64,000 bases of DNA, from IMG/VR virus record IMGVR_UViG_3300023184_000024, positions 288,755-352,754 of that record; one strand, written 5' to 3'. The stretch's first letter is position 1, and every line of letters starts with the position of its first letter. This document shows positions 40,258 to 57,459 of the stretch, piece after piece. Below the pieces are notes generated by a model. The model made no database searches, was not told the DNA's origin, and saw nothing but the letters and a program-made list of their open reading frames with translations. A program made the translations under genes and the position numbers.

Positions 40258-41565
40258 CCTAGCCCGGTTGATGTCTATCAACAGTTGAATAAGATCTTGT
40301 TTTGGCTTGCTAGGCCAATCTCCGGTCAAGTATGTGATATTGTCCGGGTTATGGCTCATTAATTTTCTAAACTCAGTCCAGTCGTGTCCAGTTTTGTATT
40401 GACTGCATGACTGTTTTGCAAGTGCAACATTGTCAGTTAGTTCGTTTATTATCAACTCTGCAAATTCTTTACTGAAAAATCTTGATTGATTGTGTCTTGT
40501 TATTGCAGACATGCATTGGCCTAGTTGCATTTTGTCTCGGTCAGACATTGCACTGAGTTCTTTCATTAACTGTAGAATTTTTTCCATCCTAACAACCGGG
40601 TTTGGTTCTTGGTCATAGCTTTCGTCAAAGAAATCACCAAATGTCTGGAATCCATAGCTTTTTAAATATTCTAAACTGCCAGCTGGACCCACCAATATAA
40701 ACGGTTTGTTGCAGGCAATTGGGCGCAGTGTTTTTTCAGTTAAATGTATTCGTTGATCGTCGAACAAGGTTTCAAGTATGACTTCAAACCAACATTGTTT
40801 GTAATCTTTGACACTGTAATCTGCACTTGCATACGACGGGCTTTGATTTTTTGCAATCTGACAGAGATCGTTGTTGGGCTTAAACTCAGGATTGGTAAAC
40901 ACATGGTCAAGGTAGTGTAGGTCCTGGTCCAGTGGTGCAAAGCTTACATTACACGAGTCTGTCAGGTTGTTGTCAATGAGCAAGTCTAGAAATTTCAATC
41001 TATATTCTCTAGTACCAGACCAAGCACGGTTGTAGATGTTAAAATCTTTTTGATAGTTTTCAGCTAGACGTAATAATTGGGCATCATGTTGGGCGTATCT
41101 AAACCAGTCTCTGGCAATGAATGCATGGCTCCACCAATAAACACCTTTGTACCCGTGTTGCTCGTACAATGCTATTTGGTCAGAGTTTTTTTCACTGTGA
41201 CACAGCAGAGTCTGATCATGTATTGTCTGCCCGGCAAACACAAATTTTAAATTTTGCTTGGTAATAAAACTGGTCAATTCTGGAGTCAATGACATATAAG
41301 TTGTAGGCCGATGATATTGATACCATTTTTCAACTGTTTCTTGGGGCAAATTTTCATATAAGTCAAAATTTAACGGCTCTTGATCATACATAATCATCGG
41401 CACAGTTCGTGCTAGATCGCAGGCCAACAGTTTTACAGACTCTTGTTCTAAGCGTTGTAGGTCGGGCACTTTTTTACTGCCATGAGGAAAAAAACAATAA
41501 ATTATAATGTCTTGATCAATTAAATCACCAATGTAGTGATACAACTTATCTAAAGGAATAAACAT
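40246..41565 (-). CDS. GT10-like ('TEK' motif) putative glycosyltransferase
   Basis: ILET..LTEKTLRPI..KPFILVG..GFQTF..DESYD. Confidence 0.55.
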   Translation of the reverse strand: MFIPLDKLYHYIGDLIDQDIIIYCFFPHGSKKVPDLQRLEQESVKLLACDLARTVPMIMYDQEPLNFDLYENLPQETVEKWYQYHRPTTYMSLTPELTSFITKQNLKFVFAGQTIHDQTLLCHSEKNSDQIALYEQHGYKGVYWWSHAFIARDWFRYAQHDAQLLRLAENYQKDFNIYNRAWSGTREYRLKFLDLLIDNNLTDSCNVSFAPLDQDLHYLDHVFTNPEFKPNNDLCQIAKNQSPSYASADYSVKDYKQCWFEVILETLFDDQRIHLTEKTLRPIACNKPFILVGPAGSLEYLKSYGFQTFGDFFDESYDQEPNPVVRMEKILQLMKELSAMSDRDKMQLGQCMSAITRHNQSRFFSKEFAELIINELTDNVALAKQSCSQYKTGHDWTEFRKLMSHNPDNITYLTGDWPSKPKQDLIQLLIDINRARSAD

Positions 41566-42802
41566 GTCGAGTAAAATAGGTTTTATAGGTTTAGGGAAAC
41601 TAGGCCTAGAGTGTGCTGAAGTTTTTGCAGAACACTATGAAGTTTCAGGTTATGATATTTACCCACGCACCAGCGACTCAGTAAAAGTTTGCAACATTGA
41701 GGACGTGGTAGAAAACAGCGATTGGATTTTTATTGCTGTGCCAACACCCCACAGTGAGGGGTACGATGGATCAGTTCCAAGTTCACACATGAAGCCCAAA
41801 GACTTTGGTCATGATGCTGTGATTGATGCAATCAACAAGGTCAATACATTTGCCACTAGTTCTAAAAAAATTGTGCTTATTTCCACAGTTCTTCCTGGCA
41901 CCACACGCAAACATTTTTACTCGTTGTTGGACAAAAAACATCAGTTTTTGTATAACCCGTATTTGATTGCCATGGGGTCAGTGAAATGGGACATGGTCAA
42001 CCCAGAAATGGTCATGATTGGCACCGAAGATGGTGATCAAACAACTTTGGCCAGCGAGCTCATTGAAATTTATAAACCATTGATGAAAAACGATCCAAGG
42101 TATGTTGTGGGCACATGGGACGAATGTGAAGCAATTAAAATTTTCTACAACACCTTTATCAGTGCCAAGGTTGGTCTTGCCAACATGATTCAAGACTTTG
42201 CACTCAAAATTGGCAACATCAATGTTGATGTGGTCACCAATGCATTGGCACAAAGCACCATGCGTATCATGGGCCCAAAGTACATGACCGCTGGCATGGG
42301 CGATGCTGGAGCCTGTCATCCTCGAGATAACATTGCTCTTCGTTGGTTAGCTGAAGAATACAACATTGGTTACGACTTGTTTGATACCATCATGCATGCT
42401 CGTGAAATCCAAGCAAAGAATCTAGCACAATTTTTGGTAAACCAAGCCAGCAACGGGTTGCCAATTGCCATTCACGGCAAAGCATACAAGCCTGACGTTG
42501 AATACTGCATTGGATCTTACTCAACGCTGGTTGGGCACTATGTCAAAGAACTCGGGCACACTGTGGTTTACGTAGATCCATTGGCCGACAATTCAACTGA
42601 TGTTGTTGCTGAGTTAACTGGACCTCATGTGGTGTTGTGGGCACACAATCGCAAAATCACCTATGAGTACACTGGAGATCAACTTGATACACAGCCATAT
42701 TGTGTTATTCCTCAAGGATCGATAATTGTTGACCCATGGCGCAAACTTGGGGACTCTGAGGAACACACAATTATCCACTATGGCAACACACGTGGTCAGT
42801 AA
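41564..42802 (+). CDS. UDP-glucose/GDP-mannose dehydrogenase family protein
   Basis: GLGKLG, AVPTP, STVLPGT, IKIFYNTF, catalytic-region GACHPRD. Confidence 0.9.
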   Translation: MSSKIGFIGLGKLGLECAEVFAEHYEVSGYDIYPRTSDSVKVCNIEDVVENSDWIFIAVPTPHSEGYDGSVPSSHMKPKDFGHDAVIDAINKVNTFATSSKKIVLISTVLPGTTRKHFYSLLDKKHQFLYNPYLIAMGSVKWDMVNPEMVMIGTEDGDQTTLASELIEIYKPLMKNDPRYVVGTWDECEAIKIFYNTFISAKVGLANMIQDFALKIGNINVDVVTNALAQSTMRIMGPKYMTAGMGDAGACHPRDNIALRWLAEEYNIGYDLFDTIMHAREIQAKNLAQFLVNQASNGLPIAIHGKAYKPDVEYCIGSYSTLVGHYVKELGHTVVYVDPLADNSTDVVAELTGPHVVLWAHNRKITYEYTGDQLDTQPYCVIPQGSIIVDPWRKLGDSEEHTIIHYGNTRGQ

Positions 42803-45838: not shown

Positions 45839-46855
45839 ATGATCGCTCGTGTGGGTTTTGCTTGCAAATGGATAAATGATCCCAGCCAAGTTGCTGGCCT
45901 AAAACCCAATGCAGTGGATCGTGACCTCAATGGTCGAAGTACAACCATGCGTTGGTTACGTGAACACAAACTTGAAGCCGAACAACGTCAGTGGGACATT
46001 ATGAATCATAATGCTCGTGCTGCCTTGCTGATGGTAGAACGTGTGGGCAGTTTACCCCTACACCTGCGTATGGTACGCCTGGGCAGTGAAATGTTACAAG
46101 GCTACACTGAGCCAGACTGGAAGGCCTGGTGGCAACGCAGGGAAATTCAAGATCACTGTGCTGACATTTTTGCACCTGTGGGTGCTCGTGCTAGAGAACT
46201 GGGAGTGCGACTGAGTTTCCATCCTGGGCAGTTTTGTGTGTTAGCCAGTGAAAGTGACGAAATTGCAGGGAGAAGCATTGAAGAATTTGAATATCATGCG
46301 GACATGGCACGTTGGATGGGCTACGGCAAAACGTTCCAGGACTTTAAGATCAATGTACATATTTCCGGACGGAAAGGTCCTGCGGGTATTCAAAGTGCCC
46401 TCCAACGGCTCAGCCCCGAAGCAAGAAATTGCATTACTATCGAAAACGATGAGATGTCTTGGGGAATAGACGCCAGTTTAGAATTGGCCAGAGACTGTGC
46501 GCTAGTGCTTGATATCCATCACCATTGGATTAAAACTGGAGAATATATTGAAAACAATGATGACCGTATTAAAAAGATTTGTGATAGCTGGCGTGGTGTT
46601 AGGCCTGTTGTACATTACTCCGTCAGTCGTGAAGATGTACTTGTCGGACATTCCCGATCACAACGCCCCGCTCTTGTTCCGTTAATGGAAACAGGCCACA
46701 AAAAAGGCAAACTTAGAGCACACAGTGATTTTTATTGGAACGATGATGTTAATCGGTGGGCAGCCACGCACAGTGCCTGGGCCGACATCATGTGCGAAAG
46801 CAAAGGCAAGAATCTTGCCAGCCAGGAATTTGCAAAGTACTGTGTACCATCATGA
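45839..46855 (+). CDS. uvsE: UV damage endonuclease
   Basis: GFAC, RLSFHPGQF, IENDE, LDIHHH, HYS, RAHSD, MCESK.K. Confidence 0.92.
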   Translation: MIARVGFACKWINDPSQVAGLKPNAVDRDLNGRSTTMRWLREHKLEAEQRQWDIMNHNARAALLMVERVGSLPLHLRMVRLGSEMLQGYTEPDWKAWWQRREIQDHCADIFAPVGARARELGVRLSFHPGQFCVLASESDEIAGRSIEEFEYHADMARWMGYGKTFQDFKINVHISGRKGPAGIQSALQRLSPEARNCITIENDEMSWGIDASLELARDCALVLDIHHHWIKTGEYIENNDDRIKKICDSWRGVRPVVHYSVSREDVLVGHSRSQRPALVPLMETGHKKGKLRAHSDFYWNDDVNRWAATHSAWADIMCESKGKNLASQEFAKYCVPS

Positions 46856-47152: not shown

Positions 47153-47175
47153 AGGCACCGAAAGGTGCTTTTTTT
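47153..47175 (+). terminator. Rho-independent terminator
   Basis: AGGCACC-GAAA-GGTGCTT followed by TTTTT. Confidence 0.85.
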
Positions 47176-47241
47176 ATACCCACTATTTCTTTTCTCCAAA
47201 ACAAGTAAATATTAAAATAACAACTATAATAGGTGAGCATA

Positions 47242-48645
47242 ATGATAAAAAGAATTGCCCTGAGCTTGATCAGCCTTGCGCTGATAGCGGTAGCCACTGC
47301 ACAAACAACAACCGGAACGTCGGGTACCTCTGGCGGCACAACCACTGGAACTACTACAGTTATTAACCAAGGTAGCTATGATTCCAAATCATTGGTAGAT
47401 ACCAATAGTACTAGTAACAGCGTGAGCACAATTAACACAAACAACGTTAACAGTGGCACTATTACCAACAACAATAACACCAGTTTAACTGGTGGAACAA
47501 CAAATACCAACGTTAACACAAATACCAACAATGGTACAATGACCAACAACAATAACAACAACAACGTTATGAGTGGCAGTGTTACCTATACAAACAACAA
47601 CAACAATGTAAACAGCGGTACTCAAACGTTCAACAACAATAACGTCAACACTGGTACAATGACCAATAATAACAACAATGTCAATACCAGCACCAGTTCG
47701 AGTACTAATGTTAACACCAATAACAATGTCAACAGCGGTACACAAACGTTCAACAATAATAATGCTAGTACATCATCCAGCACAGCAGTTAATACTAATA
47801 ACAATATTAACAGCGGCACAATGACTTACAACAACAACAATGTCAGCTCTAGTACAAGTACCAATACAAATAACAATAACAATGTCAGCACAAGTACCAA
47901 CACAAATTATCAGTATGGTACAATGACCAATAATAACAACAACGTGAATACCAGTACCAGTGCCAACACCAATAACAATGTTAACACAGGTGACATGACC
48001 AACCGTAATATCAACAATACCACTGCTACAACCAGCAACACCAACACCAATGTTAACAGTGGCACAATGACCAACATTAATCAGAATACCAACAATGGTA
48101 CAATGACCAACAACAACAATAACACTAGTACAAGCACCAATGTCAATCAAAATGCCAACGTTAATCAAAACATCAACAGTGGTGAAATGACTAACAAGAA
48201 TATCAACGAAACAACTATCACGCAAAAAGTTATTCAACCTCCACCAACTGCTGTTGCTCCTGCAATGATGAGTGGTGGCAATGCCGATTTATGTAGTACT
48301 GGTACCAGTGGTAGTGTTCAGACTCAAATATTTGGAGTAGGTGCCGGCAGTACCAGTCGTGATATGAATTGTGAACGATTAAAGTTAAGTAAAACTTTGT
48401 ATGATATGGGTATGAAGGTTGCCGCTGTGGCCACAATGTGTCAAGACCGTAGAGTATTTGATGCCATGTTGGCCGCTGGCACACCCTGCCCGTTTGAAGG
48501 CAAGATTGGTGAACAAGCCAAGGCTGCATGGGAATCAAATCCAGAAAAGTTGCCAAAACTTGAAGAGGAAAAACTAGATGACACTTACAAGAAAGTTGGC
48601 TTCGGCGCTTTGCTTGGCGTTCTCATTCATAACGCTTTCAAGTAA
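47242..48645 (+). CDS. Secreted Asn/Thr-repeat protein with Cys-containing C-terminal domain
   Basis: Signal peptide, roughly 260 aa of N/T/S repeats, then a 4-Cys domain (DLC..NCERLK..MCQD..TPCP). Confidence 0.75.
   Translation: MIKRIALSLISLALIAVATAQTTTGTSGTSGGTTTGTTTVINQGSYDSKSLVDTNSTSNSVSTINTNNVNSGTITNNNNTSLTGGTTNTNVNTNTNNGTMTNNNNNNNVMSGSVTYTNNNNNVNSGTQTFNNNNVNTGTMTNNNNNVNTSTSSSTNVNTNNNVNSGTQTFNNNNASTSSSTAVNTNNNINSGTMTYNNNNVSSSTSTNTNNNNNVSTSTNTNYQYGTMTNNNNNVNTSTSANTNNNVNTGDMTNRNINNTTATTSNTNTNVNSGTMTNINQNTNNGTMTNNNNNTSTSTNVNQNANVNQNINSGEMTNKNINETTITQKVIQPPPTAVAPAMMSGGNADLCSTGTSGSVQTQIFGVGAGSTSRDMNCERLKLSKTLYDMGMKVAAVATMCQDRRVFDAMLAAGTPCPFEGKIGEQAKAAWESNPEKLPKLEEEKLDDTYKKVGFGALLGVLIHNAFK
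47400..48200 (+). repeat. Coding low-complexity repeat (NNNN-VNSG-TMT / TQTF units)
   Basis: Recurring AAC/AAT runs and GGTACAATGACCAA copies. Confidence 0.9.
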
Positions 48646-51088
48646 TGCTCAAGTAGATAGTACCACCGGTAATTTAATAAATTACGGTACATCTGCCACG
48701 GATACAACCAGTACTTGGAACAACGGCGTCTACGTTAACCAGCTATGCTTTGCTGCCGGCCAACCAGGAAACTGTGGACCAAACCCTAGTGTTCGTCAAG
48801 GTGGCTATATCAACTTCAGTTACGGCACAGCTGATCTTAATCAAATTGTCAACATAAACCGAGCCCTGGCTGCTGGCGGCACAGGAGTACAACTCAGTGG
48901 ATTTAACTTTGGATTTACAGCAAAGAATGGTAATGGCTGGGACGATGCTAGACAGGATTATCTAGCCGCTTATGTTAAACTATATGGCAGTGGCGGCAAT
49001 TTAGTTGCCAATTATGATTACTCAGCACAGACTAACAGAAAATACAATTGGACTAACTTTAGCTTTAACGAAACATTTGCCAACCCGGCGGCCGCTTCAC
49101 AGTATAGTAACGCACAAGTGGGCTTTGTAGGCAGAGACAATAACTTCTGGGCAGGAAATTATGGTCCTGAAATTTTTAATGTTAGTTTTAGTTTGAAATA
49201 TCGTGTTGATCCTTGTGCTCAGAATCCTGCCTACAGTCCTAGTTGTTCTGGATTTAACACAGTTACAACCAGTAACAATTTGTTTAATTCTAGTGTATGG
49301 GGAAGTTCCGTAAATCAAGCAATTGCCATTAATACCGCATTAAAGAACGGCGGCATTGGTGCCACAGTGCACGGCTTTAACTATGGATTTGATTATACAG
49401 TAGGTGAAAGTTGGTTCGGTTGTACAGCTACCAATCAAGATGGATCTTGTAGTTGGTATATGAATATTCCTGCTCAAGTAAGTGCCACAGCACGACTTAC
49501 CAACAGTAGCAATCAAACAATATATTCAAAAGGTCATACATTAACCGGTGACGGCACCAGCGGATCGGTGAGTGGGCAGTATTTGTTGACAACCAGTTTG
49601 AATCAAACATCCTTGGGCAATGTCAGCTTAACGGGTAGTACTTCGGGTACCGGATCATCCATTGGTAATTTTTCAGCAAGTTTGATTTATACTGCTGACC
49701 CTTGTGTGTCTAACCCATTGTACAATGCATCTTGTTCAGGATATGCCGTTGCTTTTGCTAAAAATATGTTATTGGGCTCGACAGTTGCCAGTGCGTCTGG
49801 TCCTATAGTGGCTTCGAGTGGTTCAATAAGTTTGTCAACAACATCAACAGGTTCGTTAGAACCAGCACCAACATCGGGACCAACAGAACAAAGCGGACCA
49901 ACACAACCCCAACAAACATCCGGACCTGCCCCAAATCCCACACAAGATTCGGGTCAAACTACAGCACAATCGGATCCTGCACAACCAAGTCCAACACAAG
50001 CAGGTCCTGCTCCCACAAGTCCGCAACCTGCCGGCGGGCCTCCGCAGACTGCAACAGCAAGTGCGCCAAATTCATCTGGACCTAGTGGAGGAGGCTCAGC
50101 AGGTCCAAGTAAATTAGCAATGAGTGTGGTTAAAACAGCACAGGCAAATGACAAAGCTACGCAAAATGCCGCAGTACAGAATGCCGCTAAAACTCTAGAA
50201 GGTTCAATACAAAGTTCGCAAGCCGCTAGTAATGCCGCAATTAGCATGAATCAAGATATGAGTGCTAACAGTGCTGTTGCAGCCGCAAACTTTGCTGGCC
50301 AAACAACACAGGCTAGTCAGCAAACTGCTATACAAGCAACTCAACAAACATCACAGTCTAATGTGCAACAGACGCAACAAAGTTCTAGGGTAACACAGCA
50401 AGTACAGCAACAACACGATGTACAAGTATCAATGATTCAATCAACTAACGGAGTTTCACAAATTCAACAGTTTATATATACTCCTCCGGTACAGCAACAA
50501 ACTGATACACTGTCTGCACAGATTAGTATGTTAAAACCACCCGCTCCACTGGTCATTGAAATGCAACAACAAACTAGTGGCGGCACTGGTTTAACTGTTA
50601 GTCGCAACTTGTTTGCTTACAATCCATTAATGTCATCAAATACTGCCAATATGTCAGCACTATTGCCTGCTCCTCAACCTGTGTATCAACCTAGATTAGA
50701 TACTAGACAAAGTGAAGTGGAAACGCCACAAATGCCGATTGCCAGTTTTGGCGGTGCAGGCCGTGCCGGTAATCCGTTGTCAGAAATACTGATGCAACAA
50801 AAATTTGAAATCATGCAGGATAATATAGCGCAACCGGGCAGTTTGGTGAATAGAAATGCGCTACCAAATGAGCTGGCAGGTGGCATTGATATTGCTAGTA
50901 TAGCCAGTGTGCCCCAGGGATTTAATGCTTATTCATTTGTGTTAAAAGATGCGTCGTTCTATGAGCCAAAAGAAGTTTATAAAAATCAACGCACAGTTGA
51001 CAATGAACGAGTGTTGCGAGGATTGACCAGAGGTAGTGACAGCTTACATCAACGCATGGTTGATCAACAGTATAAGATAGGAAATTAA
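48578..51088 (+). CDS. Large secreted protein: two tandem beta domains plus Pro/Gln-rich regions
   Basis: Signal peptide; duplicated Q.x.IN.AL..GG.G..GFN.GF and DPC..NP.Y..SCSG motifs. Confidence 0.7.
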   Translation: MTLTRKLASALCLAFSFITLSSNAQVDSTTGNLINYGTSATDTTSTWNNGVYVNQLCFAAGQPGNCGPNPSVRQGGYINFSYGTADLNQIVNINRALAAGGTGVQLSGFNFGFTAKNGNGWDDARQDYLAAYVKLYGSGGNLVANYDYSAQTNRKYNWTNFSFNETFANPAAASQYSNAQVGFVGRDNNFWAGNYGPEIFNVSFSLKYRVDPCAQNPAYSPSCSGFNTVTTSNNLFNSSVWGSSVNQAIAINTALKNGGIGATVHGFNYGFDYTVGESWFGCTATNQDGSCSWYMNIPAQVSATARLTNSSNQTIYSKGHTLTGDGTSGSVSGQYLLTTSLNQTSLGNVSLTGSTSGTGSSIGNFSASLIYTADPCVSNPLYNASCSGYAVAFAKNMLLGSTVASASGPIVASSGSISLSTTSTGSLEPAPTSGPTEQSGPTQPQQTSGPAPNPTQDSGQTTAQSDPAQPSPTQAGPAPTSPQPAGGPPQTATASAPNSSGPSGGGSAGPSKLAMSVVKTAQANDKATQNAAVQNAAKTLEGSIQSSQAASNAAISMNQDMSANSAVAAANFAGQTTQASQQTAIQATQQTSQSNVQQTQQSSRVTQQVQQQHDVQVSMIQSTNGVSQIQQFIYTPPVQQQTDTLSAQISMLKPPAPLVIEMQQQTSGGTGLTVSRNLFAYNPLMSSNTANMSALLPAPQPVYQPRLDTRQSEVETPQMPIASFGGAGRAGNPLSEILMQQKFEIMQDNIAQPGSLVNRNALPNELAGGIDIASIASVPQGFNAYSFVLKDASFYEPKEVYKNQRTVDNERVLRGLTRGSDSLHQRMVDQQYKIGN

Positions 51089-51089
51089 T

Positions 51090-51278
51090 ATGGATTATAT
51101 TGCTTATTTTATGCTGGGATTTGGATTTGGTATACCGTTTTACTATATCTTTTATTACAATAACTCCATGGATCGACTTGAACGTATGAAACATGATCTA
51201 TCAGTAAAGAAAGAATGGTGTAGAATGTTGGCCGAACAAAAAACAAACAATTCAAAATGGCCAGTGGGTTGGAATTAA
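51090..51278 (+). CDS. Small membrane protein
   Basis: AGGA SD, N-terminal hydrophobic segment. Confidence 0.5.
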   Translation: MDYIAYFMLGFGFGIPFYYIFYYNNSMDRLERMKHDLSVKKEWCRMLAEQKTNNSKWPVGWN

Positions 51279-51292
51279 ATTAGGAGAAAAAA

Positions 51293-51913
51293 ATGACAGA
51301 AGAAATCAAAGATGTAAATGCCAAAGTCGACGAACTTGAAGCAGCCGCAAAGAAGTATGCTAGTAAAGATACAGTTATCAGTATCGGTGGATATGAATTT
51401 ACCCCCGCTAAACTAATGGTGGCAGCCACAATTGTATCATCTATATTAGGTGGACTGTACGGCACATTCGAAGTGTACAAAGACTATGTCGGTATGAAGA
51501 AAAAGATTGCTGAATACTCTGCCCCAGACCTAAGTGGGTTTGACAAGCGTTTAGCAGTCATTGAAGAGAATAGTGCCAAGACCAGCGACTACACACGTGA
51601 TATTAAAACAGACTTAAAAAACGATTTACGTCGTAACGAAACAGTTACTGAGCAAATAGAACGCAGTGTTAAAAATACACAACGTGAAACTGAAGGTGAA
51701 ATGCGTGATATGCGCAAGGCGGTAAGAGAAGACTTGGAAAGAGCAAGAAACGAAGCCAACGCAATTCGCAAGGACATGGAATCAACACGCAAGGAAATCA
51801 ACAGCGAATTTACTGCGGCTCGTAGAGAAATAAACCGTGAAGTAGAAACACTAAAGAGAGAAGTTGACAGTAAAATACAAAAAGCCATTGACAATCCCCT
51901 GGCCAACAAGTGA
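51293..51913 (+). CDS. Single-TM coiled-coil protein
   Basis: AGGAG SD, TM at about aa 42-60, long heptad C-terminus ending DNPLANK. Confidence 0.7.
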   Translation: MTEEIKDVNAKVDELEAAAKKYASKDTVISIGGYEFTPAKLMVAATIVSSILGGLYGTFEVYKDYVGMKKKIAEYSAPDLSGFDKRLAVIEENSAKTSDYTRDIKTDLKNDLRRNETVTEQIERSVKNTQRETEGEMRDMRKAVREDLERARNEANAIRKDMESTRKEINSEFTAARREINREVETLKREVDSKIQKAIDNPLANK

Positions 51914-52594
51914 TTATTGTTTGAGAACAGACCGTACCAGGCTGTCTATGCTGTTGATCAACGGAACATTTTTATAATGTGTTTCTTTGACAGCCAACGG
52001 TATCTCTGTACAGCCTAGTACTACGGCATCGACGCCCCAGGGAATTAACTGATCAATTGTGTTTAATAGCAGATCGTGTGCTTCATCAATCTGGCCTGAC
52101 TTAACAAGATCTATCGCGGGTTGTACAACGTTGTCCATTTGATGTGTGTCGGGCGTGATACATTTCCATCCTGACTTGCCCAAGTAGTCCTGGTATAATC
52201 CCAAACTCATTGTGGCTTTTGTGCCTATTATTCCAACGGTGCCACTGTATATTTTTAATGCTGTTAATTCTTCTGCCACACTGCCCACAATGTGTGTGAT
52301 TGGCACGCCAAGTTGGCTCAACCTGTCAAACCAAAAATGTGCTGTATTGCATGGGATTACAATATGGTCACACCCTGCATTTTTTAAACCCAATACGCCA
52401 GCTTTGAGTTTGGCCCAGGGGAGATCATCTCTATTAATTAAACTGGTACTACGATCTGGCACAGTGGGGTCATTCCACAACACAAAAGGTATGTGTTCTT
52501 GATCGCAAGTGGCCGGAGTTTGTTGAATTAATCTTGTGACAAACTCTGCTGATGCTGCCGGCCCCATGCCACCTAGGATGCCTAGACGTTTCAT
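51914..52594 (-). CDS. Aspartate/glutamate racemase (RacX-like)
   Basis: LGILGGMGP, IPCNTAH, LGCTEIP (both catalytic Cys present). Confidence 0.93.
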   Translation of the reverse strand: MKRLGILGGMGPAASAEFVTRLIQQTPATCDQEHIPFVLWNDPTVPDRSTSLINRDDLPWAKLKAGVLGLKNAGCDHIVIPCNTAHFWFDRLSQLGVPITHIVGSVAEELTALKIYSGTVGIIGTKATMSLGLYQDYLGKSGWKCITPDTHQMDNVVQPAIDLVKSGQIDEAHDLLLNTIDQLIPWGVDAVVLGCTEIPLAVKETHYKNVPLINSIDSLVRSVLKQ

Positions 52595-53196
52595 TTTTTA
52601 TTGAATAACAAGCTGGAAGCAATGCCCATTGCGGTCTGCATCTCTTCTACGTTGTCTGGTTGCTCTTTCCAGCCCACACTAATTTGTCCGATGAATACGC
52701 CAGGTTCAGCGGGTACACTGATACGGCACATATAGTTTATACCATAGTCTTTGTACACAAAGCCAATGAGACTCTGCGGTTTAAGATATGGACTGCAGGG
52801 AATCTTACCTGACATTAAACCAATAACGTCATTGTTGTTATTGTAGTCTTTGGAAAACAATCCAACTTGCAGGCCGTCGTGATTCTTATCTCTTCCTGCA
52901 CCACGTGTGACCAAATAAACAACTTTACGAGTGTTGATTAATGTGTTTACTTCTAGAATGGCAATCATTTCTGCATTGGTATTCTTCAACAAAAAGTTTG
53001 CGGCTTCTTCGTACTTGCCATTCATCCTGGGCAAAGCTTGTTGAGCACGATAAGTTGCCAAAAAGGCATCTTTTTCAGTGTAAACAATCCAGCCGCCAAA
53101 CCCTAATATGCAAAGTAACACAACCGCAAACAAGCGGAATGGACTGGAACCAATCCATTCCAACAGCGTTAACAGTGTAGCTTTAAGTTGTTCCAC
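52591..53196 (-). CDS. T4 gpT-like holin (single TM plus periplasmic GAF-like domain)
   Basis: RLFAVVLL..KDAFLATY, INYM..FIGQISVGW and A..LL C-terminus parallel T4 T as I recall it. Confidence 0.6.
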   Translation of the reverse strand: MEQLKATLLTLLEWIGSSPFRLFAVVLLCILGFGGWIVYTEKDAFLATYRAQQALPRMNGKYEEAANFLLKNTNAEMIAILEVNTLINTRKVVYLVTRGAGRDKNHDGLQVGLFSKDYNNNNDVIGLMSGKIPCSPYLKPQSLIGFVYKDYGINYMCRISVPAEPGVFIGQISVGWKEQPDNVEEMQTAMGIASSLLFNKK

Positions 53197-54460
53197 CAGC
53201 GGCTACCTCTTTGTCACAGACAAATGCTGTGACTGCTACGTTGCCGTGTACATGACTTGCTGTGCGAATCATATCCATTAATGGATCAACTGCGATCAAC
53301 AATACTAACACCGCTTCGCTGGGCAGTTTCAACAAGTCACAAACAACTGCCACTGTGGCCACTGTAAGGATACCTGTTGTGCCTGCACTGGCTAAACCAG
53401 CAAGGATACTGCCTAATAGTACAACCAACAATCCTGTAACACCCAGTGGTGCGTCATAGATGTTGGCAATGAATACTGTGGCAATGGCGTAGTAAACAAT
53501 GCTGCCAATACGGTTAACAGTAAAACTCAGTGGAACTGTAAGTTCAACTCCGCCTTTGTCAAAGTGTAGTTTGTGTAACGCCTCTTGTGCATATGGAATG
53601 CAAGCTAAACTACTACGTGAACTAACAGCAACAATTAATGTTTCTTTGGTTTCTTTAATAACAGTAGCAAGACTTAATCCGCTACGTGCCCAAATTACAG
53701 CAGTACCTGCGGCAATAACCAAGAAGCCACCGATAGCTTGTTGCATTACAAAGTCAAACATGGTCATAAAAATACCAACACCTACTTTACCAACCTGTGA
53801 CGAAATCATTGCTAATAGTGCTATTGGTAGGAAGTAGTTTAGGAATTTAAAGATACTGATACTGGCTTGCTGGACACTCTTTAGTACTTCAACCAACATG
53901 CGCTGACCTTCAGTCTTTAAGTGACCAAGGGCTACACCAAAGATCAAACAGAAGATAACAATCTTCAAACTTTCACCATTGTTTAGTGTGTTGAAGATAT
54001 TTTCTGGAATAAACTTCTCTGCCATTTTACCTGCATTAACTGGTGCGGCTGTTGGCATTGGTTCTTTAAGAGTAATGTTTAAATCAGTGCCACTGTCTTT
54101 ATCGTTGACCAATACACCAAGTTGTGTTTTCTTCTCAGGGGTCATTTCAGTGCCAGTGATCAAAACTGTACCTACTCCAATTGTAGCGGCAATAAACATA
54201 CTGCTGACAAAGCCAATGATGATTCTACGAATTAACGCCTGACTGCCTTCTTTTTGTAGCAAGCCAATAATACCAACTAGAATAGTAGCAAGTAAGAATG
54301 GTAGTACAACTACCTTTAATAAACTAATATAGATACTGCCAATGCTGTCCAGTCCAATACTAAATGCTGGAGCATAAACTCCGCTTAGTATACCTACAAT
54401 AATTGATCCTAAGATGGTCCAAGGACTTGTCAGGAAACTTTTTAAATGTGATGTTGTCAT
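53183..54460 (-). CDS. Dicarboxylate/amino acid:cation symporter (DAACS family)
   Basis: IPENIF, SSRSS, LASAG, D.LMDMIRT; multi-TM. Confidence 0.9.
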   Translation of the reverse strand: MTTSHLKSFLTSPWTILGSIIVGILSGVYAPAFSIGLDSIGSIYISLLKVVVLPFLLATILVGIIGLLQKEGSQALIRRIIIGFVSSMFIAATIGVGTVLITGTEMTPEKKTQLGVLVNDKDSGTDLNITLKEPMPTAAPVNAGKMAEKFIPENIFNTLNNGESLKIVIFCLIFGVALGHLKTEGQRMLVEVLKSVQQASISIFKFLNYFLPIALLAMISSQVGKVGVGIFMTMFDFVMQQAIGGFLVIAAGTAVIWARSGLSLATVIKETKETLIVAVSSRSSLACIPYAQEALHKLHFDKGGVELTVPLSFTVNRIGSIVYYAIATVFIANIYDAPLGVTGLLVVLLGSILAGLASAGTTGILTVATVAVVCDLLKLPSEAVLVLLIAVDPLMDMIRTASHVHGNVAVTAFVCDKEVAAGGTT

Positions 54461-54469
54461 GATGTGTCC

Positions 54470-55288
54470 TTATTTCTTTTCTGCTTTGTAACGATCCATT
54501 AACTTTTTAGTGTCAATATTATTGTATTCATTTTTAATAACGTAATTAACAATGCTTAACAATTGAATTGCTCGGGGATTCACAGCAATAGCAATGTTAT
54601 CTACGCTGTCGCTGATTGTAATTGACTTAGTAGTAATTGCCGCGTCGGGCTTTTCAAAAGCAATTTTCTTGATTTCAAATTCATCACGGTAAGCGGCAGC
54701 AATGTCGCCACGTGTGACTTTGTCAATGATCACATCCCATTTTTCTTCAGGAAGGAATACTGCGTTGGGAAAGTTTACACGAGCAAATGTATCGTAACTT
54801 GAGTTCTTGATAAAACTTATCTTGCCATTAAAATCTCTAATGACTTGGTATACTTCACGTCCTTGGCTGTTCTGACTTAGCCACAAACGATTAATAACCA
54901 AACTCTGTCTTAGTTTAATGTAAGGATCGCTGAATCTAACAACTTGTAAACGTGGCCCAGTTACGGATAGTTTACTAACTGCAATATCTGCTTTACCGTC
55001 ACGAACCTGTTCTACAACTTCAGCAAAACTTTCAGCATCGCGTCTGAACTGCACTGGCACTCCGAGTAGGACACTAATTCGTCGAGCAATCTCAACGTCG
55101 AGACCTCGAATATTATCCTCGTCACCACTGAAGAATGGAGGATTGTCTTTTTTGGTCATTGCCACAACAAGCACATTGGCTTTTTTGATTGCGGCAATAT
55201 CTGCGGGCAGAGGTACGGTTGACGTTGGTAACTGTGCAGACGCAACAGAGGCCAACAACATTAGTACAGAGGCGAGTAATTTTTTCAT
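54470..55288 (-). CDS. Periplasmic amino-acid binding protein (SBP family 3)
   Basis: Signal peptide MKKLLA.., DNPPF, GLDVEIA, ADIAVS.LSVT..R..FSDPY. Confidence 0.88.
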   Translation of the reverse strand: MKKLLASVLMLLASVASAQLPTSTVPLPADIAAIKKANVLVVAMTKKDNPPFFSGDEDNIRGLDVEIARRISVLLGVPVQFRRDAESFAEVVEQVRDGKADIAVSKLSVTGPRLQVVRFSDPYIKLRQSLVINRLWLSQNSQGREVYQVIRDFNGKISFIKNSSYDTFARVNFPNAVFLPEEKWDVIIDKVTRGDIAAAYRDEFEIKKIAFEKPDAAITTKSITISDSVDNIAIAVNPRAIQLLSIVNYVIKNEYNNIDTKKLMDRYKAEKK

Positions 55289-55349
55289 TTGTATGTGTCC
55301 ATAATGTAGGTATTTAATACCCAATGTTATTTATGTTTTTAGATGTTAC

Positions 55350-55653: not shown

Positions 55654-56688
55654 CTAACTTGCAGTATCGAGCGTAGATTTAATATCTGCAATCATGCGGG
55701 CCACCCAAGCTGTTTTCATTGTTAGATCATAGTTGTGTTCAACAATGGGCTGACACAGTTGATAAATCTTGGCTTGTTCTTGTGTCTGCAAATATGCAAC
55801 TTGCTCTAACATCAATTTTACCCTGACCGATATATCGGGCTCCGAGTCGTAACTTTCATCAATGATGCCATGAAATGTTTGAAATCCAAGCTTTCTTAAA
55901 TTATGCAGATAGTATTGCCCACCGGCAACCACAAACAATCTACGACACATCATTGGTTTTATAATTTTTTCAGTAAAAAAACTAAAACTATTTTCACTTT
56001 GTGTTTCGGCAATTAAACTGTAGGCGCTGTGATTATAAACATCAATTGGCACCAATTGACTTAGACTAACAATGGTAGAATCTACCACAACTTCGGAACC
56101 TGTAAATGTAATTTCATTTTCAGGCAAATCAACAGGCCAAATGAATTGGCTCGACGAGTAATTTCTAAGATCAAGATCCACGTTGGTTGGATAATAAGTT
56201 ACTATGTTCTGACTGTGGTCCATTGAGTCATAAACCATTGATCTATGCACCTTGCGCCGGCCCAACAAAACATCAAAGAATTTGTCCTTGGGCAACACGT
56301 TGCTGACTTTGGGCAACCAATTTTGCTGTGTGTGATAAAAATCAGTGGTGCTCCAAAAGAAATAATAATGAAACTTGACCTGACTATGCCCGGGAGTCCA
56401 ATTTAAAATGCCGGCAATGTAAAAAACTACGTTTGGCCTATCAAATTTTTTGCACCAATGATCGTCGATGAATTCGGGCAAGAACACCAAGGCCTTGCTG
56501 GCATGCGACACTATTTTTTCCAGTTCAGATTCAGTGTCATTGCCAAAGTCTTGTGTTTCCCACAAAGCAACACACTCATTGCTGGGCAATGACAACCAAA
56601 CGTCAAGATCATTGACTATGTTGCCATCAACGCCGGTTTCTTCAAACCAGTATTGTAGATTTGGATTGCTGATATAAATGTGTTTCAC
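55654..56688 (-). CDS. GT10-like ('TEK' motif) putative glycosyltransferase
   Basis: IAET..FTEKIIKP..GFQTF..DESYD. Confidence 0.55.
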   Translation of the reverse strand: MKHIYISNPNLQYWFEETGVDGNIVNDLDVWLSLPSNECVALWETQDFGNDTESELEKIVSHASKALVFLPEFIDDHWCKKFDRPNVVFYIAGILNWTPGHSQVKFHYYFFWSTTDFYHTQQNWLPKVSNVLPKDKFFDVLLGRRKVHRSMVYDSMDHSQNIVTYYPTNVDLDLRNYSSSQFIWPVDLPENEITFTGSEVVVDSTIVSLSQLVPIDVYNHSAYSLIAETQSENSFSFFTEKIIKPMMCRRLFVVAGGQYYLHNLRKLGFQTFHGIIDESYDSEPDISVRVKLMLEQVAYLQTQEQAKIYQLCQPIVEHNYDLTMKTAWVARMIADIKSTLDTAS

Positions 56689-56751
56689 AGTGTATTTACT
56701 GCTGGTCGTTATAGTAAGTGTAAATCAACAACAACGGGTGCTAACTACATA

Positions 56752-57459
56752 ATGATTGAATTTATAACAATGTTGGTAATGACACACATTACCATTCTAT
56801 GTGTCACATTGTATCTGCATCGTAGCCAAGCTCACAAGTCAGTTACGTTCCATCCAATTGTTGCACACGCCATGAGATTTTGGCTATGGATGACTACCGG
56901 ACAAATTACCCGACAATGGGTAGCGGTACATCGCAAGCATCACAGATTCACAGAAGTACACGGTGATCCACACAGCCCGCATGTGTTTGGTTTTTGGCAT
57001 GTGCTGTGCAAAGGTGCTGTGCTGTATCATACTGCCAGTAAAGACTCGGCAATGGTGGCACAATATGGTGCTGGCACACCCGATGACTGGATTGAACGCA
57101 ATGTTTATTCCAAGCATAGTAGACTGGGCATTGCGTCAATGCTGTTGATCAATATAGCTGTGTTTGGTGCATGGGGACTACTAATATGGGGCATACAAAT
57201 GATATGGATCCCATTCTGGGCCGCCGGTGTCATCAATGGAGTGGGACATTGGCTGGGGTACCGCAATGGCGAAACCAAAGACCACAGTCAAAATATCAGT
57301 CCCTGGGGTATCGTTATTGGCGGAGAAGAACTACACAACAATCACCACATTAACCCTGCCAGCCCCAAATTGAGTAGCAAGTGGTGGGAGTTTGATATAG
57401 GATGGGCGTGGATACGTGTGCTAGAGATGGTCAAGTTGGCCAAGGTGCGCACAGTTTAG
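56752..57459 (+). CDS. Fatty acid (acyl-CoA/lipid) desaturase, DesA-like
   Basis: His boxes HRSQAH, HRKHH and HNNHH; DPHSP. Confidence 0.93.
   Translation: MIEFITMLVMTHITILCVTLYLHRSQAHKSVTFHPIVAHAMRFWLWMTTGQITRQWVAVHRKHHRFTEVHGDPHSPHVFGFWHVLCKGAVLYHTASKDSAMVAQYGAGTPDDWIERNVYSKHSRLGIASMLLINIAVFGAWGLLIWGIQMIWIPFWAAGVINGVGHWLGYRNGETKDHSQNISPWGIVIGGEELHNNHHINPASPKLSSKWWEFDIGWAWIRVLEMVKLAKVRTV

What the first reader, a model, noticed from the sequence alone, without database searches (positions are those of the whole stretch)
47206..51913. Late-expressed envelope module built around an Asn/Thr-repeat protein: possible functional amyloid, ice-binding or surface-filament system
Seen: behind a TAAATA box lie (i) a signal-peptide protein with roughly 260 aa of NNNN-VNSG-TMT-type repeats, almost free of charged residues, followed by a 4-Cys domain with an amphipathic beta-hairpin-like stretch (GTSGSVQTQIFGVGAGSTS); (ii) an 836-aa secreted protein overlapping it by 68 nt, with two duplicated beta domains capped by DPC..NP.Y..SCSG, a Pro/Gly linker and a Gln-rich stalk; (iii) a membrane-anchored coiled-coil protein. 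Signal peptides point to the host envelope rather than the capsid. Known: Asn/Gln ladders build curli/Fap amyloids, and TxT/TxN arrays occur in ice-binding solenoids. Inference: a phage-built trans-envelope structure that alters the infected cell surface (aggregation, receptor masking or grazing defence).
Basis: partly seen in the sequence, partly recalled or inferred. Interest (0 to 1): 0.75.

Follow-up and report, generated by a model that had tools for sequence, protein, structure and literature searches.

The report
Conserved phage envelope module near lysis genes
A freshwater jumbo phage carries a late-promoter operon for two secreted proteins and one membrane-anchored protein; the same unstudied trio occurs in thousands of aquatic phages, often beside their cell-bursting genes, so it probably acts on the host envelope at the end of infection rather than making amyloid or ice-binding fibres.

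Summary
Window 47206-51913 holds a TAAATA box followed by three genes. Gene A has a signal peptide, about 315 aa of Asn/Thr/Ser repeats and a 4-Cys domain. Gene B (836 aa, 68-nt overlap with A) has a signal peptide, two beta-sandwich domains, a Pro/Gly/Gln stalk and a conserved C-terminus. Gene C has one TM helix, a coiled coil and an invariant C-terminal NPL. The window is the end of a 352.7-kb freshwater jumbo phage.

A-B-C are adjacent in all 79 related loci. Homologous trios occur in pelagiphages, a roseophage and many aquatic phage contigs. None is annotated. B's first domain matches sugar-binding FBA/CBM folds (Z 12.6). A's Cys domain has no solved-structure match.

TAAATA is a real genome-wide motif that precedes the portal, sheath and terminase genes, so late expression is plausible. 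In 16 of 35 informative small-phage loci the trio lies within 3 kb of holin, endolysin, lipase or Rz/Rz1 genes.

Best reading: a periplasmic, glycan-binding, inner-membrane-tethered complex acting late in lysis or egress. It is not a canonical spanin. Amyloid and ice-binding readings have no support. The function is untested.

The parts
47153..47177 (+). Terminator-like hairpin (AGGCACC-GAAA-GGTGCTT) plus a T run, closing the upstream gene
47206..47211 (+). TAAATA box, 36 nt upstream of the gene A ATG. It is the only such box in the module, so A-B-(62-aa ORF)-C is probably one late transcript.
   Evidence: The genome has 175 TAAATA sites. 77 lie within 60 nt upstream of a gene in sense orientation, against 6.3 expected; the antisense control gives 16. 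All 10 large TAAATA-preceded genes tested are virion or packaging genes.
47242..48645 (+). Gene A (467 aa from the ATG): signal peptide aa 1-20, Asn/Thr/Ser repeat stalk aa 21-335, 4-Cys domain aa ~335-440, hydrophobic tail aa ~450-467
   Evidence: a GGTGA Shine-Dalgarno-like sequence lies 6 nt before the ATG
47302..48246 (+). Asn/Thr/Ser-rich degenerate repeats (nine [VI]N[ST]G.[MQ]T motifs; 9 charged residues of 315)
   Evidence: There is no DNA-level tandem array. A is 323-538 aa in full-length relatives. Metagenome contigs break and rejoin here.
48232..48561 (+). Conserved 4-Cys domain (beta hairpin plus helices), a phage-only family
   Evidence: 1144 clusters at 50% identity with E<=1e-3. 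AF2 model pLDDT 78. No PDB fold match. Only uncharacterised, mostly viral homologues. PHROG 20531, function unknown.
48578..48645 (+). 68-nt A/B overlap: the same DNA encodes A's hydrophobic tail and B's signal peptide in two frames
   Evidence: Overlaps of similar size occur in most relatives and in small phages.
48578..51088 (+). Gene B (836 aa): signal peptide aa 1-24; beta-sandwich domains aa ~29-210 and ~225-395; Pro/Gly/Gln linker aa 400-512; long helix aa 513-577; Gln-rich region; conserved C-terminal region aa ~700-836 ending ..HQRMVDQQYKIGN
48662..49762 (+). Two tandem FBA/CBM-like jelly-roll domains, each closed by a DPC..NP.Y..SC.G cap
   Evidence: pLDDT 80-95. VIA Z 12.6 and 12.2 to the Fbs1 and Fbs2 sugar-binding domains; other hits include CBM16, CBM61, CBM22 and CBM4. 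Foldseek finds CBM22 tandem and CenC-type CBMs.
51090..51278 (+). 62-aa ORF with an N-terminal hydrophobic segment; an optional part
   Evidence: Found in only 10 of 79 related loci
51293..51913 (+). Gene C (206 aa): N-terminal 40 aa, TM at about aa 41-63 (51413-51481), conserved juxtamembrane motif, coiled coil of variable length, invariant C-terminal NPL (51893-51901)
   Evidence: An AGGAG Shine-Dalgarno sequence lies 7 nt before the ATG.

Best explanation
The region is a three-gene operon of a freshwater jumbo phage, transcribed from a late-type TAAATA promoter. It encodes a periplasmic envelope complex.

- Gene A is exported by Sec. It carries a long uncharged Asn/Thr stalk of variable length, a small disulfide-stabilised domain, and in most lineages a C-terminal hydrophobic anchor.
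- Gene B is translationally coupled to A and is also exported. It has one or two sugar-binding-type (FBA/CBM-like) beta-sandwich domains, a long flexible or helical stalk and a conserved C-terminal interaction region.
- Gene C sits in the inner membrane with an i-spanin-like topology: N-terminus inside, coiled coil in the periplasm, invariant C-terminal NPL.

Shown: the gene architecture, the strict A-B-C synteny, homology of all three genes across jumbo phages, pelagiphages and roseophage-type phages, the fold of B's domains, the promoter-motif class, and frequent adjacency to holin, endolysin, lipase or Rz/Rz1 genes in small phages.

Inferred: the three proteins assemble into an inner-membrane-tethered structure that binds a periplasmic glycan, most plausibly peptidoglycan, and acts at the end of infection in envelope breakdown, its timing or egress. 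On this reading it is an accessory lysis module alongside holin, endolysin and spanin, not a replacement for them.
For: - Architecture and signal peptides.
- Synteny: A and B in 79/79 related loci, C in 72; most of the other 7 loci end just past gene B. The flanking genes vary.
- Homologous trios occur in HTVC115P, HTVC202P, Mosig, CRP-810 and many aquatic contigs. Profile searches link window B to the B2 type (2.7e-58), B2 to B1 and B3, window C to C1 (9e-56), and C1 to C2.
- B's domain 1 matches sugar-binding FBA/CBM folds. A profile of B gives weak hits to F-box protein 6 and 44 chains (E 0.007 and 0.14).
- TAAATA is enriched 12-fold upstream of genes and precedes the portal, tail sheath, TerL and baseplate genes.
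- 16 of 35 informative small-phage loci have Phage_lysozyme, GH19/M15, GTA_holin_3TM, Lipase_3 or Rz/Rz1 within 3 kb. The module lies directly before TerL in HTVC202P.
- A and B lengths co-vary (Spearman 0.64 over 48 distinct length triples).
- Cultured-phage hits are from phages of Pelagibacter, Roseobacter and Ralstonia, plus a weak fold match to an Achromobacter phage protein. These hosts are Gram-negative (my knowledge).
Against: - No experiment or expression data exist. No RNA run was listed.
- In the jumbo phage itself the module is far from the GH19/holin/lipoprotein cassette at genome 53-57 kb.
- About half of the informative small-phage loci show no recognised lysis gene nearby. The loci are phylogenetically non-independent.
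- TAAATA also precedes some nucleotide-metabolism genes (RNR, ligase), so 'late' is not proven.
- The topology of C rests on a weak positive-inside signal.
- The ligand of B is unknown.
Confidence: 0.42

Rival explanations
1. Superinfection exclusion or receptor and debris masking. The periplasmic complex blocks DNA entry by later phages, or modifies or occupies envelope components so that progeny are not lost on lysed-cell debris.
For: - The proteins are phage-encoded and exported or membrane-anchored.
- In T4-like genomes (Mosig, L130) the module lies next to the primase gene. In T4, the periplasmic exclusion gene sp lies near the primase gene (my knowledge).
- B carries glycan-binding folds.
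- B's stalk and A's repeats evolve fast.
Against: - The A domain and C are highly conserved across phages of very different hosts (59% identity between the jumbo phage and a pelagiphage). This argues against host-receptor-specific masking.
- The promoter motif is late-type and the small-phage position is in the late operon. Known exclusion genes such as T4 imm and sp are early (my knowledge).
- Known exclusion systems are single small genes.
Confidence: 0.2
2. A non-canonical spanin. C acts as the i-spanin and A and/or B as the outer partner, together fusing or rupturing the outer membrane after peptidoglycan is degraded.
For: - C has i-spanin architecture: an N-terminal TM, a coiled coil and a conserved C-terminal tip.
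- A and B are secreted, contain Cys, and their genes overlap.
- The module sits in or beside lysis cassettes and just before TerL.
Against: - There is no outer-membrane lipoprotein. No B homologue has a strict lipobox; a relaxed PROSITE-like pattern fits 0 of 63 jumbo-type and 4 of 21 small-phage B proteins.
- There is no match to spanin PHROG or Pfam families.
- Canonical Rz/Rz1 co-occur with the module in L130. The jumbo phage has an LTAC lipoprotein in its own lysis cassette.
- Conservation is much higher than is typical for spanins.
Confidence: 0.15
3. One reading: gene A's Asn/Thr repeats form a functional amyloid, an ice-binding solenoid or a surface filament, exported through B and C to alter the cell surface.
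For: - The repeats are real, uncharged and quasi-periodic at about 12-14 residues, with TxT-type motifs.
- All components are exported.
- In one module subtype, three extra small secreted proteins lie between B and C.
Against: - There is no hit to Curlin, DUF3494 or any other Pfam family and no PDB sequence match.
- No outer-membrane channel partner is present. B is a soluble-type beta-sandwich protein and C a single-pass coiled coil.
- The repeats are irregular and hypervariable in length. In homologues they are replaced by 30-60 aa Thr/Ser linkers or by regions named collagen-like or YadA-head-like. The conserved part is the Cys domain, not the repeats.
Confidence: 0.05
4. A virion or assembly component, for example a tail-fibre-associated or membrane-assisted assembly factor.
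For: In several podovirus-like contigs the module directly follows tail-fibre genes. It shares a promoter class with structural genes.
Against: - A and B have classical cleavable Sec signal peptides, conserved in all homologues, and would leave the cytoplasm where tailed-phage virions assemble.
- In the jumbo phage the module sits among replication and auxiliary genes, not the structural block.
Confidence: 0.06

Closest known systems
Two-component spanins (lambda Rz/Rz1; T4 PseT.3/PseT.2)
   Same: Late phage genes in or near lysis cassettes. An inner-membrane protein with an N-terminal TM, a periplasmic coiled coil and a conserved C-terminal tip (gene C). Secreted Cys-containing partners. Overlapping reading frames. 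Predicted to span the periplasm.
   Different: No lipoprotein partner. Three, sometimes six, proteins rather than two. A large glycan-binding component. No sequence-family match. Co-exists with canonical Rz/Rz1 (L130). Much stronger sequence conservation.
FBA (Fbs1/FBXO2 sugar-binding) and CBM4/16/22/61-type carbohydrate-binding modules
   Same: Gene B residues 29-208 superpose on Fbs1 and Fbs2 (Z 12.6 and 12.2, rmsd about 3 A, about 150 residues) and on several CBMs. Domain 2 is a second jelly roll.
   Different: Not a sequence member of any Pfam CBM or FBA family. A bacterial periplasmic context. Each domain has an added disulfide cap (DPC..NP.Y..SC.G). The ligand is unknown.
Curli (CsgA/CsgG), Fap amyloid systems and ice-binding beta-solenoids
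   Same: A secreted Asn/Gln/Thr-rich repeat protein.
   Different: No Curlin or DUF3494 match, no dedicated outer-membrane secretion channel, irregular repeats, and a repeat region that is dispensable or replaced in homologues.
Extra lysis factors outside the holin-endolysin-spanin triad (LambdaSo Lcc6; mycobacteriophage LysB; phiKT disruptin)
   Same: Precedents that lysis cassettes carry additional envelope-directed proteins (bioRxiv 10.1101/2024.01.23.576932, PMC5707550, bioRxiv 10.1101/515445).
   Different: No homology to any of them. Those are single proteins; this is a conserved three-protein set.
Periplasmic superinfection-exclusion proteins (T4 Sp and Imm, T5 Llp)
   Same: Phage-encoded exported proteins that act in the envelope of the infected cell.
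   Different: Those are small single early genes tuned to one host or phage. This module appears late and is conserved across phages of unrelated hosts.

Membership tests
Two-component spanin | i-spanin: N-terminal TM segment with a periplasmic coiled-coil domain | tested here: met
   Gene C has a TM at about aa 41-63 followed by a charged helical region. Only coiled-coil-type PDB hits were found. The N-in/C-out topology is inferred from flanking charges in short homologues, not measured.
Two-component spanin | o-spanin: small outer-membrane lipoprotein with a lipobox Cys | tested here: not met
   A and B have SPase-I-type sites (ATA|Q, SNA|Q). No B homologue has a strict lipobox. A relaxed pattern fits 0 of 63 jumbo-type and 4 of 21 small-phage B proteins.
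Two-component spanin | Sequence membership in Rz/Rz1 families | tested here: not met
   A, B and C have no spanin PHROG or Pfam hits. True Rz/Rz1 (PHROG 739 and 812) lie next to the module in L130.
Curli/Fap functional amyloid | Curlin-type repeats and a dedicated outer-membrane secretion partner (CsgG/FapF) | tested here: not met
   Gene A has no Pfam family at E<=0.01. Neither B nor C resembles an outer-membrane channel.
Ice-binding proteins | A regular beta-solenoid with flat TxT/TxN arrays, or a DUF3494 fold | tested here: inconclusive
   There is no Pfam or PDB sequence match. Nine TxT-containing motifs occur at irregular 12-40 aa spacing.
Carbohydrate-binding module / FBA fold | A jelly-roll beta sandwich superposable on known sugar-binding domains | tested here: met
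   Z 12.6 to 2e33 and 12.2 to 8zuh over about 150 residues. CBM16, CBM61, CBM22 and CBM4 score Z 7.4-9.9. Foldseek probability is 1.0.
Carbohydrate-binding module / FBA fold | Sequence-family membership and demonstrated sugar binding | tested here: not met
   No Pfam hit. Only weak profile hits to FBXO6 and FBXO44 (E 0.007 and 0.14). Binding cannot be tested with these tools.
T4-type late promoter (TATAAATA) | A conserved A/T-rich -10-like box upstream of late (structural) genes | tested here: met
   77 of 175 TAAATA sites lie within 60 nt upstream of genes in sense orientation (6.3 expected). All 10 large genes tested are structural or packaging genes. One box lies at -36 of gene A.
T4-type late promoter (TATAAATA) | Dependence on a phage late sigma factor (gp55-like) and late timing of transcripts | not tested
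   No RNA data were listed. A search for a gp55 homologue was not run.

The most novel reading that the evidence does not exclude
A-B-C is a previously unrecognised class of phage egress machinery. It would be a three-protein, inner-membrane-tethered complex that binds cell-wall glycan and is needed, beside holin, endolysin and spanin, to open the envelope of aquatic Gram-negative bacteria. It would be conserved from pelagiphages to 350-kb jumbo phages.
Probability: 0.25. Interest if true: 0.85.

Novelty: new variant of a known kind. Interest (0 to 1): 0.62.

Why it matters
The three families are very large. More than 7,900 clusters at 90% identity were found for the A domain and for C, both searches being capped, and 1,144 clusters at 50% identity for the A domain. 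They are restricted to phages, apart from contigs binned into MAGs. They occur in cultured pelagiphages and a roseophage, that is, in viruses of some of the most abundant bacteria in oceans and lakes. None carries an informative annotation, and no paper found here describes them.

How these phages breach the envelope is poorly known. A conserved, late, envelope-directed trio that keeps turning up beside holins and endolysins is a concrete candidate for a missing step in lysis or egress, or for an exclusion system. It can be tested in existing phage-host pairs. It also adds a phage-only disulfide domain with no solved-structure match, and a periplasmic use of an FBA/CBM-like fold.

Tried and rejected
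- Pfam, PHROGs, PDB sequence search and ESM Atlas feature searches gave no named family for A, B's C-terminus or C. The only hits were coiled-coil noise and PHROG 20531 of unknown function.
- Foldseek and VIA searches of the A domain against the PDB gave nothing above background.
- Complex prediction (A domain + B 500-836 + C 64-206) returned no verdict, with a score of 0.00. This is not evidence either way.
It worked with the narrower A3.
- No DNA-level tandem repeat underlies the Asn/Thr region.
- No RNA sequencing run was listed, so expression timing could not be checked. DNA contigs laid on the region showed breaks and rejoined forms inside the repeat region, but at 85% likeness these may come from relatives, so I gave them low weight.
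- 'The module replaces spanins' was considered and downgraded: there is no lipoprotein, and it co-occurs with Rz/Rz1.
- I tested whether the three extra secreted proteins of B1-type modules are fragments of the long B proteins. HMM searches found no link.
- Megablast of 20 kb of the window against GenBank phages found nothing. Gene B has no tblastn hit in GenBank phages.
- Literature searches on pelagiphage spanins, HTVC115P, CRP-810 and freshwater jumbo phages found no description of the module.

Full report
**What the window is.** The window is the last 64 kb of a 352,754-bp viral record with direct terminal repeats. Lake and freshwater metagenomes hold the same sequence. The window carries helicases, ribonucleotide reductase, ligase, a UvdE endonuclease and host-like auxiliary genes. 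The flagged region therefore lies in the replication and auxiliary part of a jumbo phage, not in its structural block.

- A terminator-like hairpin with a T run (47153-47177) closes the upstream gene. TAAATA sits at 47206-47211. An ATG with a GGTGA Shine-Dalgarno-like sequence opens gene A at 47242.
- Gene A (467 aa) has a classical signal peptide. Residues 21-335 are 34% Asn, 24% Thr and 12% Ser, with only 9 charged residues and nine [VI]N[ST]G.[MQ]T motifs at roughly 12-14-residue or larger spacing. No DNA-level tandem array underlies them. A domain with four conserved cysteines and a hydrophobic tail follows.
- Gene B (48578-51088, 836 aa) overlaps A by 68 nt and has its own signal peptide. 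Two beta domains each end in the conserved DPC..NP.Y..SC.G cap. A Pro/Gly/Gln linker, a long helix, a Gln-rich stretch and a conserved C-terminus follow.
- A 62-aa hydrophobic ORF follows. Then comes gene C (51293-51913), with one TM segment, a charged helical region and a C-terminal ..DNPLANK.

**It is one conserved unit.** A scan of viral contigs with gene B returned 79 distinct loci. The A domain lies immediately upstream of B in all 79. C lies immediately downstream in 72; most of the other 7 loci end just past gene B. Flanking genes such as the racemase-symporter block move around or are absent. The 62-aa ORF is present in only 10 loci. A's domain and C are the most conserved parts (75-97% and up to 94% identity). 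B and A's repeat region diverge fastest. Full-length A ranges from 323 to 538 aa, B from 522 to 874 aa and C from 159 to 230 aa. A and B lengths co-vary (Spearman 0.64 over 48 distinct length triples) and C does not. Relatedness was not corrected for.

**The module reaches far beyond jumbo phages.**
- The A domain hits pelagiphages HTVC115P, HTVC023P, HTVC202P, HTVC033P, Baldr and the myophage Mosig. It also hits roseophages CRP-810 and CRP-207 and Ralstonia phage RSP15.
- In HTVC115P, HTVC202P, Mosig and CRP-810 the A-type gene is again followed by a larger gene (with a signal peptide in Mosig and HTVC115P) and a small TM-plus-coiled-coil gene.
- A scan of one genome per prokaryotic species found 44 loci. 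Nearly all are MAG or single-cell contigs from aquatic samples with phage gene content.
- Local profile searches tie window B to the 'B2' type (E 2.7e-58) and B2 to B1 and B3 through the beta domain and the C-terminal ..H..MVD.QY.. region. They tie window C to 'C1' (E 9e-56) and C1 to the short 'C2' type of Mosig and HTVC202P.
- In 26 aligned C homologues the C-terminal NPL is invariant. So is a Phe in the GGFE.Y motif just after the TM.
- The families are very large and carry no informative annotation.

**Structures.**
- B residues 30-400 fold with pLDDT 80-95 into two beta sandwiches. The rest is low-confidence apart from the helix at 513-577.
- Domain 1 superposes best on the sugar-binding domains of Fbs1 and Fbs2 (Z 12.6 and 12.2, about 150 residues). 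It also superposes on a range of carbohydrate-binding modules and phage tailspike or fibre domains. A profile of B gives weak hits to the same F-box proteins.
- The A domain folds (pLDDT 78) as a beta hairpin followed by helices and a terminal hydrophobic helix. It has no match among solved structures. It matches only uncharacterised homologues, mostly viral, some with N-terminal regions that automatic names call collagen-like or YadA-head-like.
- In short homologues, A's N-terminal region is only a 30-60-residue Thr/Ser/Asn linker. The Asn/Thr array of the jumbo phage is therefore an expanded, replaceable stalk or spacer, not the conserved functional core.

**Timing.** TAAATA is depleted in the genome overall (175 sites on both strands, about 450 expected from composition). 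Even so, 77 sites lie within 60 nt upstream of a gene in sense orientation, against 6.3 expected and 16 in the antisense control. All ten large TAAATA-preceded genes that I annotated are virion or packaging genes: portal, tail sheath, large terminase, baseplate wedge, fibre and structural proteins. A second motif class, TTGAC-N17-TATAAT, precedes 26 other genes. The module has a single TAAATA box, before gene A. Late co-expression as one transcript is therefore plausible but not shown. The motif also precedes RNR and ligase genes, and no RNA data were available.

**Genomic company in small phages.** I clustered all neighbouring ORFs of 50 small-phage loci and annotated the recurrent clusters. 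Recognised lysis genes lie within 3 kb of the module in 16 of 35 informative loci:
- Phage_lysozyme in four loci.
- GH19 or GH19+M15 peptidase in five.
- GTA_holin_3TM in three, with weaker hits in three more. One of these is the gene directly upstream of Mosig's A gene.
- Class-3 lipase in four.
- A canonical Rz/Rz1 pair in L130.

In L098 the order is A, B, three small secreted proteins, C, an EF-hand two-TM protein, holin, GH19. In HTVC202P the module ends just before the large terminase. In T7, that position holds the spanin genes (my knowledge). Against a rough 20% background the association gives p of about 5e-4, but the loci are not independent.

In the jumbo phage itself the GH19 gene, a three-TM protein, an LTAC lipoprotein and a GTA-holin-like gene lie at genome 53-57 kb, far from the module.

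**Interpretation.**
- The signal peptides, disulfide domain, membrane anchors and occurrence in phages of Gram-negative hosts place the products in the periplasm and inner membrane.
- The late-type promoter and the lysis-cassette neighbourhood point to a function at the end of infection.
- B's fold suggests binding of a glycan reachable from the periplasm. Peptidoglycan is the obvious candidate; this is inference.
- C looks like an i-spanin. However, neither A nor B is a lipoprotein, there is no spanin family match, and canonical spanins co-occur. I therefore do not file the module as a spanin.
- I rate an accessory lysis or egress complex as most likely (about 0.4). Exclusion or masking comes next (about 0.2), then a non-canonical spanin (about 0.15).
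- The amyloid and ice-binding readings get about 0.05. Nothing beyond composition supports them, and the repeats are the least conserved part.
- A complex prediction for the three proteins returned no verdict and is not used as evidence.

**Novelty.** None of the literature searches found a description of the module. Recent work shows that lysis cassettes can hold further essential factors, for example Lcc6 in LambdaSo (bioRxiv 10.1101/2024.01.23.576932). I class the finding as a new variant of a known kind, namely phage envelope or lysis-associated proteins. There is a real chance that it is a new class of egress machinery.

Noticed in passing
window 48578-48645: The same 68 nt encode A's C-terminal hydrophobic tail in one frame and B's signal peptide in another. 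Overlaps of about 60-95 nt recur in most relatives and in small phages. A's tail might be partly a by-product of overprinting, because some homologues lack it.
   Followed up: partly
window 51914-55324 (- strand): A block of host-like genes: an Asp/Glu racemase, a 201-aa membrane protein, a sodium:dicarboxylate symporter and a family-3 solute-binding protein. It moves as a unit relative to the module in relatives (upstream in L015 and L016, downstream in L003, L004, L006, L048 and L060). It looks like an amino-acid uptake and racemisation auxiliary set.
   Followed up: partly
window 45839-46855; 56680-57459; 41564-42802: Further auxiliary genes: a UvdE UV endonuclease, a fatty-acid desaturase and a UDP-glucose/GDP-mannose dehydrogenase.
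   Followed up: no
whole genome; in the window, upstream of the genes starting at 2478, 17793, 31574 and 31915: A second promoter class with an extended conserved sequence (GGTTGACC..N..TTTGCTATAATACTTG) precedes 26 mostly small genes. It is probably the host-sigma70 early class, distinct from the TAAATA class.
   Followed up: partly
genome C1:53032-56653 (outside the window; loci L131, L132): The jumbo phage's apparent lysis cassette: a GH19-like gene, a 158-aa three-TM protein, an 88-aa lipoprotein with an LTAC lipobox (a possible o-spanin) and a GTA_holin_3TM-like gene.
   Followed up: partly
L098:8236-9493 (also L089, L092, L104, L108, L109, L113): In one module subtype, three extra small secreted proteins (about 165, 127 and 135 aa) lie between B and C. 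The first has Cys-containing N- and C-terminal strands reminiscent of fimbrial subunits, but matches no family.
   Followed up: partly
L098:10011-10301 (7 loci in all): A small protein with an N-terminal EF-hand (PF13202, E 4.8e-6) and two TM segments sits between the module and the holin. A calcium-binding membrane protein in a lysis cassette is unusual.
   Followed up: no
L087:7558-8307 (-), L091:9953-10687, L108, L109: A class-3 lipase (PF01764, E 3.7e-20) lies beside the module and endolysin in four loci. It recalls the lipolytic LysB of mycobacteriophages, here in phages that presumably infect Gram-negative hosts.
   Followed up: no
L012:2960-3613 and L079:9586-10239 (gene C homologues): The length differences in C's coiled coil are insertions of 11-residue units (for example REITREVVGLK / REISKEVEVLK / RETSKEVEVLK). 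This suggests hendecad-type repeats.
   Followed up: no
window 48578-48613: Public gene calls start gene B 12 codons later (824 aa). That removes the positively charged n-region of the signal peptide. The ATG at 48578 has a GAGGA Shine-Dalgarno-like sequence upstream and gives the better signal peptide.
   Followed up: partly
window 47445-48170: Metagenome contigs from four runs end, skip or loop back inside the repeat-coding region. This fits strain-level variation in repeat number or assembly collapse. At 85% likeness these contigs may come from relatives.
   Followed up: partly
L128:3839-4330, L130:9610-10101, L082:4318-4746: In T4-like carriers the module is followed by a tail-anchored coiled-coil protein (DUF7201, PF23831) and then the primase gene. 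L130 also has a second C-like paralogue upstream of A.
   Followed up: no
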